A stretch of 64,000 bases of DNA from Macrostomum lignano. Its lineage: Eukaryota. Position numbers and translations under genes: made by a program. The stretch lies in assembly GCA_002269645.1 (NCBI GenBank), contig NIVC01000040.1:248001-312000 (forward strand). Reading direction: 5' to 3'. The notes under the pieces are model-generated. The model saw only the letters and a list, made by a program, of their open reading frames with translations. It was not told where the DNA came from and made no database searches. Within the stretch, counting starts at the first letter, position 1. Each line of letters starts with the position of its first letter. This document shows positions 32,764-45,400 of this stretch, piece by piece.

Positions 32764-33452
32764 TCAGACAAACTGCTCCTGCTCAGACTCGTCCACATCA
32801 TCTGACAGGCAGGTCACCGTCATCTGCTTGGCTCCGCCGGAGGTCAGCTCCACGCTGGCCCGACACCTCTTGTCCAACTTCGAATCCGACTTGCCGCTGT
32901 CAATCAGCAGCTTCCTCTCGTCATCGTCGTCAGTGTCAGCGGCTGCGTCCTCCGTCATCTTCGAGCCTGTCGTCGCTTCGTTAGCCTTGACGACAGCGTT
33001 GTCGTGAGCATCGTCCGGTTTTGTTGTTTTGTTAATCGAAGACTTCGACTCGGCAACCGCGGTGGCGGCGGCCGCGGCGGCAGCGGCAGCGGCGGCGGCA
33101 GCTGCGGCCAGCGACTCCTCCTGCTTCTCCAGCCGCGTTCCAGTCGTTGGCGGCCTCGCAGCAGGCGGCGGCAGCTTCGACTGCTGACGATTGTTCCGCC
33201 GCATCAGGCCGTTGATGGCGGCGGCTTTGTCGTCCGACAGACCGGCGGCGCCTGCGACGCCCTTGTCAACGTGTCGTTGAATGTACTTTTTATTTCCGCC
33301 CTGACCGTAGCGACCGCCCTGGTTGGAGTTGGTCAGATCTTTGGTCATGATCTTCATGTACTTGTTCTCCTTCATCTGGTTCTGCATGTACTTGTAGTAG
33401 GTGTTGAAGTTGTTGCCGATGATGGGGATGGCCAGCCCGGTCACGATGCAGC
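32764..33452 (-). CDS. KCNC: Kv3-like exon 3: S6 end ([17 protein letters not shown]) and C-terminus with poly-Ala
   Basis: CCGCAG| acceptor, phase 1; TGA at 32764-32766. Confidence 0.88.
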
Positions 33453-42400: not shown

Positions 42401-45400
42401 TGCCACTGACAGTCAAATGTCACTGATAGTCAAATGTCACTGACAGTCAAATGTCACTGACAGTAAAAACTCCCTGATACTCAAATGTCACTGATAGTAA
42501 AAAGTCACTGATAGTAAAAAGTCACTGATAGTGAAATGTCAATGGCAGTCAAATGCCACTGACAGTCAAATGTCACTGATAGTCAAATGTCACTGACAGT
42601 CAAATGTCACTGATAGTCAAATGTCACTGACATTCAAATGTCACTGATAGTACAGGCGAAATGTCACCGACAGTCAAATGTCACTGATAGTAAAAACTCA
42701 CTGATAGTAAAAACTCACTGATAGTAAAAAGTCACTGATAGTGAAATGTCACTGGCAGTCAAATGTCACTGATAGTAAAAAGTCACTGATAGTAAAAAGT
42801 CACTGATAGTAAAAACTCACTGATAGTAAAAACTCACTGATAGTAAAAAGTCACTGATAGTGAAATGTCACTGGCAGTCAAATGTCACTGATAGTAAAAA
42901 GTCACTGATAGTAAAAAGTCACTGATAGTAAAAAGTCACTGATAGTGAAATGTCACTGGCAGTCAAATGTCACTGATAGTAAAAAGTCACTGATAGTAAA
43001 AAGTCACTGATAGTGAAATGTCACTGGCAGTCAAATGTCACTGATAGTAAAAAGTCACTGATAGTGAAATGCCAATGGCAGTCAAATGTCACTGACAGTC
43101 AAATGTCACTGACAGTCAAATTGTTACTGATAGTAAAAAGTCACTGATAGTCAAATGTCACTGACAGTCAAATGTCACTGACAGGCAAAATGTCACTTGA
43201 ACTGACTTTCCTAAATACTAAATGATAATCAATTCAAGCATCAAGCTTTCTTTGAGAACAGTCCGAGCGAACGGCAGAAAGGAGAATTCATAAGTCAAAA
43301 CCGCACCATCTTCTTCAGAATCTCTGCGAAACTGAATAGCCGGATTTCGAGGGGTAAAGGGATATTTATCCCAAAGCGAAATCCCAAAGAGGGGATTTCC
43401 AATTCCGCTGCTTTCCCAACTCGTGGAGCCTATACCAATGGCTAATGGATCCCTAGTAATTATCCCCCACTCTCCCTTACATCCCCGCACTCATCCCGGC
43501 AAAGCTCATTTCTTTATCCTCTTACATTTCTATAAATCCCAATTTTCCTACAACGAGAAGAGGGGAGGGGGTTTATTGTGCTAAAACATTATCCCATCAG
43601 AACTATTCAAACGATGATTGAAATTCGAAATGTCGCAGCCCTGAGGGCCAGCCCCCAGGGCGCAGAGAGTGCACATGCCTGACGATTGGAAAGTCAGATG
43701 GCCGCAGTACACCCCGTGTGAGCGTGTGGATGAGTGAGTGCGGGCCTGTGTACAGTATTGGCGCGCTTGTAGTTGTGCTCAGGGGTCAGCTGACTGGGCA
43801 GAATTGGGGTCAGCGGTTGTGTTTGCATGTCTGACACACTATCAATAACGTATAGGCTGCTAAAACATCTCCATCAACAATTACATTAACAGTGTCCACT
43901 TAACTGTCTACTCCATTATCTTTTTAGCTATCTACCCAACTGTTTGTTCTATTGTATGAGCCGTATATCACAATATAAGTTTACCCGACAACACACCGGA
44001 TAAGCTACCCCACTATCTACCCAATTATCTACCCCACTATCTACCCAATTATCTACCCCACTATCTACCCAATTATCTACCCCACTATCTACACCAATAT
44101 CTACCCCACTATCTACCCTACTATCTACCCAATTATCTACCCTACTTTCTACCCAATTATCTACCCAACTTTCTACCCCACTATCTACTCCGCAGTCTCA
44201 CCAGAAACGGCAGTAACGGATCCAATGATGAAGCCGGGCCCGCCTTTGGGCACAATGTCGCCATATCCAACGGTAGTCAAGGTGACAATGCTCCACCAGA
44301 AGGCGTGCGGTATGTCACTGAAGGTGTCAATCTGATTGTACTCGGCCATGTACACCATGGAGCTGAACAGGAACATGCCGTTCATCAGCAGGAAGCCCAG
44401 CAGCACCAGCTCCGGGATGGACTTCTTCACAGTCAGCATCAGCACCCGGAGGCCTCTGCTAATCTTGCTAATCTTGAAGATTCTAAGAATTCGAAGAGCC
44501 TGCGACATTGACAGGACGTTGAGCCACCAAATGCTGACCAGGGGCTCCTCGAGTTCCATGGAGTTCTTCAACTCGTCCGCGTTCGGGCGGTAGTAATAGA
44601 AGAAGAACAAGGACACGTAGATCCAATAAGATCCCAGAATGATGATGTCCATTATTGATATTGGCGATCGAAGGAATTTCGGTTTATCCGGCGAGACAAT
44701 TAGTTTGATGAAGAATTCAAAGGTGAAAAAAGCGTTCAAAGTGATGTCGACAACAACAAGCGCTGCCAGGGGCTCCGTTTCGCAGTCCTTGCGAATTTTG
44801 GGATTTTCAAACCGATTGGCGTGGCTGCAGAGGCCGTCTGTTGAGTTGCTCCATTGGATCTTATTGCTGGGAGTTCGGAAGGCCAGGTGAGTCTGCAGGC
44901 AGTAGCACATCACGCTGCAGATCATCAGCAGGAGCAGCAGCATCGCCCACAACTGTTGGTTGCAATTGGGGGGAGCGGTTGCACTGGGATCATTGACGTT
45001 ATTTTTATTGCGTTATTGGCACGTACTTTGGCGGAGTGATAAACAATTATAGATCGAGTGGGGAGAGGGTGGGACGGAGAGGGAGACACGGAGAGGGTGC
45101 GACGGAGAGGGAGACACGGAGAGGGAGACACGGAGAGGGAGACACGGAGAGGGAGACACGGAGAGGGTGCGACGGATAGGGAGACACGGAGAGGGTGCGA
45201 CGGAGAGGGAGACACGGAGAGGGAGACACGAAGAGGGAGACACGGAGAGGGAGACACGGAGAGGGAGACACGGAGAGGGAGACACGGAGAGGGAGACACG
45301 GAGAGGGAGACACGGAGAGGGAGACACGGAGAGGGAGACACGGAGAGGGAGACACGGAGAGGGAGACACGGAGAGGGAGACACGGAGAGGGAGACACGGA

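What the first reader, a model, noticed from the sequence alone, without database searches (positions are those of the whole stretch)
33400..44560. Shaw/Kv3-like channel with a remodelled voltage sensor and S6 gate: candidate invertebrate silent or regulatory subunit
Seen: S4 reads [20 protein letters not shown] versus Shaker [20 protein letters not shown], so R1 is Ser and R2 is Gln, with only R3, R4, K5 and a Lys at R6 left. S6 reads [16 protein letters not shown] versus [16 protein letters not shown], so PVP becomes AIP and the gate residue equivalent to Shaker V478 is Gly. The S3 proline (ILPFY) is lost. The TVGYG filter, S2 Phe/Glu, S3 Asp and the T1 HX5CX20CC Zn site are intact, and the frame is clean, so it is not an obvious pseudogene. 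Knowledge: S6 gate divergence marks obligate-heteromer regulatory subunits (vertebrate Kv5/6/8/9, and independently evolved cnidarian Shaker/Shaw regulatory subunits), and R1-R4 carry most gating charge. Inference: a lineage-specific modulatory subunit, or a weakly voltage-dependent leak-like K+ channel.
Basis: partly seen in the sequence, partly recalled or inferred. Interest (0 to 1): 0.75.

Follow-up and report, generated by a model that had tools for sequence, protein, structure and literature searches.

The report
Flatworm Shaw-type potassium channel, altered gate
This is an intact three-exon flatworm (Macrostomum lignano) gene for a divergent Shaw/Kv3-type potassium-channel subunit whose charge-poor voltage sensor and unusual pore gate are fixed in every flatworm relative found, so it is functional and may be a modulatory partner subunit, though that is untested.

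Summary
A minus-strand gene of three coding exons (59768-59301, 44952-44202, 33452-32764) encodes a 635-aa T1 + six-transmembrane K+ channel subunit. S4 reads S,Q,R,R,K,K at R1-R6, the S6 gate reads AIPIIG where Shaker has PVPVIV, and the S3 proline is absent. The TVGYG filter, the S2/S3 acidic and Phe residues and the T1 zinc site are intact. The window is Macrostomum lignano.

These features are not a local oddity. All 19 flatworm homologues examined (macrostomid, monogenean, trematode, cestode) share them. S4-S5 and S6 are the most conserved parts of the protein (87% and 79% identity), so a pseudogene is excluded.

Subfamily profiles and the predicted fold favour Kv3, but the clade lies outside the canonical Kv3 clade.

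Loss of R1/R2 is normal for protostome Shaw channels, and Drosophila Shaw works as a homomer.

The gate is the real signal. It fits the published signature of silent/regulatory subunits, Shaker P473A is non-conducting, and M. lignano also carries a canonical-gate Kv3 as a possible partner.

Regulatory subunit ~0.45; homomeric weakly voltage-dependent channel ~0.38. No tool here measures current or assembly.

The parts
59301..59768 (-). Coding exon 1 (Met1-Lys156): T1/BTB_2 tetramerisation domain and T1-S1 linker; ATG at 59768; donor AAG|GTGAGA
   Evidence: 100% identical to M. lignano A0A1I8ITD4 (P0014)
59478..59564 (-). T1 zinc motif H69-X5-C75-X20-C96-C97 ([29 protein letters not shown])
   Evidence: the motif defines the non-Kv1 T1 type (10.1101/2021.11.09.467962)
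44953..59300 (-). Intron 1 (14.3 kb, phase 0, GT-AG), largely minisatellite arrays
   Evidence: no further coding blocks found by tblastn
44202..44952 (-). Coding exon 2 (Leu157 to first base of Gly407): S1-S5, pore loop, first half of S6
44695..44769 (-). S2 with Asp225 (Shaker E283), Phe232 (F290) and Glu235 (E293)
44590..44661 (-). S3 with Asp258 (Shaker D316); the ILPFY proline is replaced (ILGSYW)
44452..44517 (-). S4: [22 protein letters not shown]; R1=Ser304, R2=Gln307, R3=Arg310, R4=Arg313, K5=Lys316, R6=Lys319, plus Arg322
44260..44274 (-). Selectivity filter TVGYG (383-387)
33453..44201 (-). Intron 2 (10.7 kb, phase 1, GT-AG), splits S6 between Ser406 and Gly407; minisatellite-rich
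32764..33452 (-). Coding exon 3 (Gly407-Val635 plus TGA): second half of S6, then a low-complexity C-tail with a poly-Ala tract, ending ...EQFV
33415..33432 (-). S6 activation-gate hexapeptide AIPIIG (Ala414...Gly419), aligned to Shaker P473-V478; preceded by a new Gly412 (Shaker A471)

Best explanation
The locus encodes a functional pore-forming subunit of the Shaker-type Kv family. It lies closest to the Shaw/Kv3 subfamily and belongs to an old paralogue lineage found in every flatworm class sampled. Shown: the gene is intact, a spliced orthologous transcript exists in a related flatworm, and the derived sensor and gate are under strong purifying selection. Inferred mechanism: the subunit does not make conducting homotetramers efficiently, because its bundle-crossing gate has lost the first hinge proline (P473A equivalent) and the sealing valine (V478G equivalent). 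Instead its zinc-type T1 domain lets it co-assemble with a canonical-gate Kv3 alpha subunit, which in M. lignano would be A0A1I8HWG5. In that heteromer it would contribute one (or two) sensors carrying only R3-R6 charges and a glycine at the hydrophobic seal. The expected effect is a shallower G-V slope, a shifted midpoint and altered deactivation. That is how vertebrate Kv5/6/8/9, vertebrate Kv3.5 and cnidarian regulatory subunits act.
For: Gene model and integrity. Kv family domains. Kv3 affinity: profiles built from clear Kv1-4 sets score the protein 375 (Kv3) against 315 (Kv2), 255 (Kv4) and 232 (Kv1). Kv3 also wins in T1 alone (117 vs 93/91/47) and in the TM core alone (242 vs 206), for all five full-length clade members. 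The AF2 model (pLDDT 87.7) matches human Kv3.1 structures best. Constraint: S,Q at R1,R2 and LAIPI[IV]GNNF are shared by all 19 flatworm homologues. S4+S4-S5 is 87% identical, S5 81% and S6 79% (25/40 columns invariant), against 22% for the S3-S4 loop and 15% for the C-tail. Regulatory signature: in mouse and Nematostella, every independently evolved regulatory cluster has an atypical PVPVIV gate, including loss of a hinge proline, whereas the homomer-forming subunits keep the consensus (PMC6279357). Shaker P473A matures and moves gating charge but does not conduct (PMC2233862). A candidate partner is present: M. lignano P0350 has LPVPIIVNNF and groups with canonical Kv3. The nemertean and annelid species carrying AIPII[G/S] genes also keep canonical Kv3 genes. 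Precedent for silent subunits inside Kv3: vertebrate Kv3.5 (preprint 10.1101/2025.09.21.677649).
Against: No functional data exist and no tool here tests assembly. The gate is invariant rather than drifting, and the S4-S5 linker, S5 and S6 are more conserved than T1, which fits a self-sufficient gating machine equally well. The two flatworm Kv3 channels studied so far (Notoplana N.at-Kv3.1 and N.at-Kv3.2) both gave homomeric currents despite atypical sensors (PMC2443804). T1 is only ~39% identical to the M. lignano canonical Kv3 T1, and its BLAST score against Kv4.3 is about the same (87 vs 84 bits), so co-assembly is not assured. No canonical-gate Kv3 surfaced among neodermatan hits; only a second atypical lineage with a TIPVLV gate did. 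If parasitic flatworms truly lack a canonical Kv3, an obligate-partner role fails for them. The new Gly412 and retained Pro416 could supply an alternative hinge. The regulatory-gate rule rests on only two species.
Confidence: 0.45

Rival explanations
1. It is a self-sufficient homotetrameric K+ channel with weak voltage dependence, acting as a leak-like or resting conductance as Drosophila Shaw does. With only R3-R6 charges the sensor moves little charge. With Gly at the V478 seal position and a relocated hinge (Gly412 / Pro416) the gate opens easily, so the channel is partly open near rest.
For: Insect and nematode Shaw channels also have neutral R1 and R2. Drosophila Shaw (S4 net +3) is a functional homomer that begins to open near -60 mV with a very shallow slope (PMC2217113). 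Both characterised flatworm Kv3 channels conduct as homomers (PMC2443804). Gate, S4-S5 linker and S5 are extremely conserved. The zinc motif is fully intact, so each subunit can both give and receive zinc ligands. Shaker V478A is functional and slightly left-shifted. From my own knowledge, not tested here: Kv7 channels carry Gly at the V478-equivalent position (LPAGILGSGF) and work as homomers.
Against: Shaker P473A homomers do not conduct. In mouse and Nematostella the homomer-forming Shaker-family subunits share the consensus gate. Drosophila Shaw itself keeps PVPVIV.
Confidence: 0.38
2. It conducts mainly through the voltage-sensor gating pore (an omega current) rather than the central pore, giving a weakly inward-rectifying, poorly selective cation current like Notoplana N.at-Kv3.2.
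For: R1 is a small residue (Ser; Thr/Ala/Gly/Asn in orthologues) and R2 is Gln. Shaker R1 to Ala/Cys/Ser/Val opens an omega pore, and a flatworm Kv3 channel uses this route naturally (PMC2443804).
Against: The N.at-Kv3.2 signature is not present. That channel has His at R1, Gly at R3 and an Asp/Asp/Glu acidic pattern in S2/S3. This protein has Ser, Arg and Asp/Glu/Asp. No Notoplana protein appeared among the listed hits of either flatworm query. Arthropod Shaw also lacks R1 and R2, and to my knowledge no omega current has been reported for it. With R1 and R2 both neutral, the resting S4 may simply sit with R3 in the charge-transfer centre.
Confidence: 0.08
3. It is a decaying or non-functional gene copy, so the odd residues are drift.
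For: Long repeat-filled introns. The public gene model covers only exon 1. A second M. lignano copy (P0040) shows frameshift-like disruptions.
Against: The 635-codon frame is open with canonical splice sites. The M. lignano protein keeps every clade-invariant residue. The 'odd' residues are the most conserved ones in all 19 flatworm homologues examined.
Confidence: 0.02

Closest known systems
Vertebrate silent subunits Kv5/Kv6/Kv8/Kv9 (Kv2 subfamily) and the independently evolved regulatory Shaker-family subunits of Nematostella
   Same: Full T1 + S1-S6 architecture with an intact filter. The S6 PVPVIV gate deviates, including loss or displacement of a hinge proline. A canonical alpha subunit of the same subfamily sits in the same genome.
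   Different: In the mammalian Kv6-Kv9 subunits the second gate proline (P3) is mostly replaced by Ser/Thr and V6 mostly by an aromatic residue. Here the first proline is lost (Pro to Ala) and V6 becomes Gly. The subfamily differs (Kv3-like rather than Kv2), the origin is independent (spiralian), and the silent phenotype is not demonstrated.
Vertebrate Kv3.5 (silent Kv3-subfamily subunit; preprint 10.1101/2025.09.21.677649)
   Same: A divergent Kv3-subfamily member proposed or shown to need a canonical Kv3 partner.
   Different: Kv3.5 arose inside the vertebrate Kv3.4 lineage and was tested in oocytes. The flatworm clade lies outside the canonical Kv3 clade and is untested.
Drosophila Shaw and nematode EGL-36-type Shaw
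   Same: Protostome Kv3 channels with neutral R1 and R2 and only about four S4 charges; non-Kv1 zinc-type T1.
   Different: They keep the canonical PVPVIV gate, and Drosophila Shaw is a proven homomeric channel. This protein has AIPIIG.
Notoplana atomata N.at-Kv3.2 (and N.at-Kv3.1)
   Same: Flatworm Kv3-family channels with naturally atypical S4 segments.
   Different: N.at-Kv3.2 has His at R1, Gly at R3 and an Asp/Asp/Glu acidic pattern. This protein has Ser at R1, Gln at R2 and Asp/Glu/Asp. Orthology could not be tested because the Notoplana sequences were not retrievable, but neither appeared among the listed hits.
Shaker P473A / V478 mutants (Hackos, Chang and Swartz 2002)
   Same: The same two gate positions are changed.
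   Different: Those are engineered single changes in Kv1. Here the changes are natural, combined, accompanied by a new upstream Gly, and fixed throughout the flatworm homologues.

Membership tests
Shaker-type voltage-gated K+ channels (Kv1-4 superfamily) | N-terminal T1 (BTB_2) tetramerisation domain | tested here: met
   Pfam PF02214, E=6e-21, residues 9-96
Shaker-type voltage-gated K+ channels (Kv1-4 superfamily) | Six-TM Ion_trans core with a T-V-G-Y-G selectivity filter | tested here: met
   PF00520 3e-36 and PF07885 4e-11; TVGYG at 383-387; AF2 model pLDDT 87.7 with Kv structures as top hits
Shaker-type voltage-gated K+ channels (Kv1-4 superfamily) | S4 with basic residues every third position, plus the S2/S3 charge-transfer residues | tested here: met
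   R3, R4, K5, R6 and an extra Arg are present; R1 and R2 are neutral; Phe232, Glu235 and Asp258 are present
Kv3 / Shaw subfamily | Zinc-type T1 (HX5CX20CC), which excludes Kv1 | tested here: met
   H69, C75, C96, C97; also conserved in orthologues
Kv3 / Shaw subfamily | Closer to Kv3 than to Kv1, Kv2 or Kv4 in both T1 and the TM core | tested here: met
   Subfamily HMM scores favour Kv3 by 52-66 bits overall, 12-24 bits in T1 and 22-36 bits in the TM core, for all five full-length clade members. Best PDB sequence and fold matches are Kv3.1. Pairwise BLAST alone is nearly tied (221 vs 214).
Kv3 / Shaw subfamily | Phylogenetic placement inside the Kv3 clade | tested here: inconclusive
   Neighbour-joining only. 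The flatworm clade is monophyletic (bootstrap 100) but falls outside the canonical Kv3 clade (bootstrap 85), in a weakly supported assemblage of atypical-gate spiralian sequences (bootstrap 68). ML or Bayesian trees could not be run.
Kv3 / Shaw subfamily | Co-assembly restricted to Kv3 subunits | not testable with these tools
   T1 is 39% identical to the M. lignano canonical Kv3 T1, with a BLAST score about equal to that against Kv4.3
Silent / regulatory Kv subunits | Atypical S6 activation-gate sequence (departure from PVPVIV) | tested here: met
   AIPIIG: first hinge proline lost and V6 replaced by Gly; criterion from PMC6279357
Silent / regulatory Kv subunits | A canonical alpha subunit of the same subfamily in the same genome | tested here: met
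   M. lignano A0A1I8HWG5 (P0350), gate LPVPIIVNNF, groups with canonical Kv3. Not established for neodermatans.
Silent / regulatory Kv subunits | No functional homotetramers (T1 or other self-incompatibility) | not testable with these tools
   Needs expression. An intact zinc motif does not discriminate, since some KvS keep it and others have lost it.
Silent / regulatory Kv subunits | Forms heteromers that change the partner's gating | not testable with these tools
   Needs co-expression electrophysiology
Natural omega-current Kv3 (N.at-Kv3.2 type) | His at R1 and Gly at R3, with an Asp/Asp/Glu pattern in S2/S3 | tested here: not met
   Ser at R1, Arg at R3, and Asp225/Glu235/Asp258
Drosophila-Shaw-type weakly voltage-dependent homomers | Neutral R1 and R2 together with a canonical PVPVIV gate | tested here: not met
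   The S4 criterion is met but the gate criterion is not

The most novel reading that the evidence does not exclude
Flatworms, including schistosomes, flukes and tapeworms, would keep a dedicated Kv3-derived channel whose central gate no longer seals (Gly at the V478 position, one hinge proline lost) and whose sensor lacks the two outer charges. It would then work as a constitutively leaky or gating-pore-conducting cation or K+ pathway that sets the resting potential. This would be a natural, flatworm-wide counterpart of the engineered Shaker gate and omega mutants, and a helminth-specific drug target with no vertebrate orthologue.
Probability: 0.12. Interest if true: 0.7.

Novelty: new member of a known kind. 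Interest (0 to 1): 0.45.

Why it matters
If the subunit is silent, it would be, as far as the searched literature shows, the first candidate regulatory Kv subunit lineage described in a protostome. It would be another independent origin of that phenotype inside Kv3, after cnidarians and vertebrate Kv3.5. It would extend the 'atypical gate predicts regulatory subunit' rule to a new gate solution (first proline lost, Gly at the seal).

If instead it conducts alone, it is a natural counter-example to that rule. It would also show that Shaker-family gates can work with an A-x-P hinge.

In either case the protein is highly conserved in schistosomes, liver and rumen flukes, monogeneans and tapeworms, and its closest vertebrate relatives are only about 30% identical. 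That makes it a reasonable candidate for anthelmintic target screening. M. lignano is a transgenic-capable free-living model in which it could be studied.

Tried and rejected
1. Kv2 (Shab) assignment. The gate resembles Kv2's PIPIIV, and pairwise BLAST is nearly tied (Kv3 221, Kv2 214). I rejected it because subfamily HMMs favour Kv3 in T1 and in the core for every clade member, and the fold search puts Kv3.1 first.

2. Distance phylogeny of 142 and then 49 sequences. The clade itself is solid, but its deeper placement and its link to the nemertean and annelid AIPII[G/S] genes are weakly supported (bootstrap 30-54). A first Biopython run timed out. No ML or Bayesian software was available.

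3. Orthology to Notoplana N.at-Kv3.1/3.2. The sequences could not be obtained. No Notoplana protein appeared among the listed hits of any of the three word-index searches. The published N.at-Kv3.2 signature residues do not match.

4. Reference sequences from the Pisupati 2018 supplement are not held. They were checked indirectly by their 694-907-bit matches to database proteins and against the Kv3.1 alignment.

5. Genomic context of the M. lignano gene model P0014 is not on record.

6. dN/dS was not attempted. Orthologues are 53-67% identical, so synonymous sites are saturated, and DNA of the near-identical M. lignano duplicate was not available. Region-wise amino-acid constraint was used instead.

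7. The zinc-site status of T1 was considered as a discriminator of silent subunits and rejected, because some KvS keep the motif and others have lost it.

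Full report
**What is there**

The finding lies on the minus strand. ORF listing and direct reading show three coding blocks.
- 59768-59301: Met1-Lys156, the T1 domain.
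- 44952-44202: S1 to the first half of S6, including TVGYG.
- 33452-32764: the rest of S6 and a low-complexity tail ending in TGA.

Both introns have GT-AG ends (phase 0 and phase 1). Joining the blocks gives a 1908-nt open frame of 635 codons. Pfam finds BTB_2 (6e-21) and Ion_trans (3e-36).

tblastn of flatworm orthologues onto the window finds exactly these three blocks. The orthologue residue numbers run on without a gap across both junctions. One orthologue (P0001) is encoded without introns on an 1841-nt contig of a Logan sequencing-run assembly, which I read as a spliced mRNA. The T1 domain it cites is at 59301-59768.

**The residues**

HMMER alignment to human Kv3.1 and MAFFT alignments give the following equivalences (numbering).
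- S4: R1=Ser304, R2=Gln307, R3=Arg310, R4=Arg313, K5=Lys316, R6=Lys319, plus Arg322.
- S6 gate: Ala414-Ile-Pro416-Ile-Ile-Gly419 on Shaker P473-V478. A new Gly412 sits at Shaker A471.
- S3: the proline of ILPFY is replaced (ILGSYW).
- Intact: Phe232, Glu235, Asp258 and H69-X5-C75-X20-C96C97. The outer S2 acid is Asp225.

**Whose gene and how widespread**

Exon 1 is 100% identical to a Macrostomum lignano UniProt entry (P0014), so the window is from this free-living flatworm. The best hits are all Platyhelminthes at 53-67% identity: Cichlidogyrus (monogenean), Trichobilharzia, Heterobilharzia, Schistosoma, Dicrocoelium, Calicophoron, Clonorchis, Echinostoma (trematodes), and Schistocephalus, Mesocestoides, Rodentolepis, Hymenolepis (cestodes). 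The next hits are mollusc and nemertean 'Kv3-like' proteins at only 34%.

In all 19 flatworm homologues that cover the region:
- R1 is never basic (Ser in most, otherwise Thr, Ala, Gly or Asn).
- R2 is always Gln.
- The S3 proline is absent.
- S6 reads G-C-[IV]-[VL]-T-G-L-A-I-P-I-[IV]-G-N-N-F-N-T-Y-Y.

Region-wise identity to the M. lignano protein is as follows.

| Region | Identity |
|---|---|
| S4 + S4-S5 linker | 87% |
| S5 | 81% |
| S6 | 79% (25 of 40 columns invariant) |
| T1 | 68% |
| S3-S4 loop | 22% |
| C-tail | 15% |

The 'remodelled' parts are therefore the most constrained parts. This excludes a pseudogene and shows the derived state is selected.

**Subfamily**

Pairwise scores are nearly tied (BLAST: Kv3 221, Kv2 214). 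Profiles built from unambiguous Kv1, Kv2, Kv3 and Kv4 sets favour Kv3 for every full-length clade member, overall and separately in T1 and in the membrane core. An AlphaFold2 model (pLDDT 87.7) matches human Kv3.1 cryo-EM chains first.

Neighbour-joining trees make the flatworm clade monophyletic (bootstrap 100). They place it outside the canonical Kv3 clade (bootstrap 85, which contains the M. lignano canonical Kv3). It sits in a loosely supported assemblage of atypical-gate spiralian sequences. I therefore call it Kv3-like, with membership in the strict phylogenetic sense unresolved.

**The voltage sensor in context**

Within the Shaw subfamily the picture is different.
- Insect (Pectinophora) and nematode (Panagrellus) Shaw have Glu and Ser at R1 and R2, with a canonical PVPVIV gate.
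- Many mollusc Kv3 paralogues lack R1.
- The canonical M. lignano Kv3 has Gln at R1 and no S3 proline.
- Drosophila Shaw, with a nominal S4 charge of +3, is a functional homotetramer. Its open probability rises very shallowly from about -60 mV (PMC2217113).

So the charge-poor S4 predicts weak voltage dependence but says nothing about silence.

**The gate in context**

Pisupati et al. (PMC6279357) found that each independently evolved regulatory-subunit cluster in mouse and Nematostella departs from the PVPVIV consensus, often by losing or displacing a hinge proline. The subunits that form homotetramers share the consensus gate.

Hackos et al. (PMC2233862) showed that Shaker P473A, the same change as Ala414 here, matures and moves gating charge but does not conduct. 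V478A is functional and slightly left-shifted.

A precondition for a regulatory role is met. M. lignano has a canonical-gate Kv3 (A0A1I8HWG5; LPVPIIVNNF). The nemertean and annelid species that carry related AIPII[G/S] genes also keep canonical Kv3 genes. A silent subunit inside Kv3 has a vertebrate precedent, Kv3.5 (preprint).

**Against a silent role**

- The gate is frozen rather than drifting.
- Both flatworm Kv3 channels studied so far conduct as homomers (PMC2443804).
- T1 is only 39% identical to the canonical M. lignano Kv3 T1.
- In neodermatans I found only a second atypical Kv3-like lineage (gate TIPVLV) and no canonical one, although the searches were not exhaustive for that question.
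- The N.at-Kv3.2 omega-current signature (His at R1, Gly at R3, Asp/Asp/Glu) is not present.

**Verdict**

The gene is a real, intact, strongly conserved, divergent Kv3-like pore-forming subunit. I rank the mechanisms as follows.

| Mechanism | Probability |
|---|---|
| Obligate or preferential heteromer with canonical Kv3 (modulatory subunit) | 0.45 |
| Homomeric weakly voltage-dependent, leak-like channel | 0.38 |
| Gating-pore conduction | 0.08 |
| Pseudogene | 0.02 |

The remainder is left unassigned.

It is a new member of a known kind. Divergent Kv3 paralogues with atypical gates are abundant in spiralians, and protostome Kv3 duplications are already noted in the literature. This flatworm clade and its AIPIIG gate did not appear, described or tested, in the papers I could search.

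Noticed in passing
window 2189-3778 (+): A single-exon, 529-aa canonical Shaker/Kv1 gene. It has a full S4 (R1-R4, K5, R6), a PVPVIVSNF gate, TVGYG and a C-terminal ETDV. It scores 669 bits to Drosophila Shaker structures. It is a useful internal control: the same genome keeps a fully canonical sensor and gate 29 kb from the divergent gene.
   Followed up: yes
window ~9730-17229 (-): Exons of a FERM / FERM-adjacent ... tyrosine-phosphatase gene (PTPN3/4-like). FERM_C and FA lie at 16318-17229. Y_phosphatase pieces lie at 11169-11591 and 9730-10143, the latter with [11 protein letters not shown].
   Followed up: partly
window 25465-26202 (+): Reverse-transcriptase (RVT_1) ORF fragment of a retroelement between the phosphatase gene and the channel gene.
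   Followed up: partly
window 33541-59265 (introns of the channel gene) and elsewhere: Both introns are packed with long minisatellite arrays (periods 10-31 bp, up to ~246 copies). One GA-rich array is 4.9 kb long (48880-53767). They create many long spurious ORFs on both strands.
   Followed up: partly
window 59301-59897 (-); proteins P0014 and P0040: The public M. lignano model A0A1I8ITD4 contains only exon 1, read through the 5' UTR and fused to an unrelated N-terminal part that is not in this window. So the full gene seems to be unannotated or split. A second M. lignano entry (A0A1I8IU17) is a near-identical copy with frameshift-like disruptions, either a duplicate locus or an assembly error.
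   Followed up: partly
window 44770-44886 (-) (S1-S2 loop) and 32767-32784 (-) (C-terminus): Two clade-specific conserved features. One is a pair of cysteines in the extracellular S1-S2 loop within the motif C...NPK..KDC.TEP, possibly a disulfide. The other is a conserved C-terminal aromatic-Val/Ile end (RNYV, MNYV, GDYV, QDYV, SAYV, ENYI; here EQFV), which may be a PDZ-type ligand.
   Followed up: no
proteins P0049, P0256-P0274 (not in the window): Trematodes and cestodes carry a second, separate atypical Kv3-like lineage. Its gate is TIPVLV and both S2 acidic positions are Asp. Some sources annotate it as 'egl-36'. Calicophoron has two copies. Its relation to the Notoplana channels is unknown.
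   Followed up: partly
proteins P0225, P0128, P0036, P0141, P0143 (not in the window): Nemerteans (Lineus, Tubulanus) and the annelid Owenia have Kv3-like genes with AIPIIG or AIPIIS gates and reduced S4 charge. They are the nearest neighbours of the flatworm clade in NJ trees, but with weak support (bootstrap 30-54), so common origin and convergence remain equally open.
   Followed up: partly
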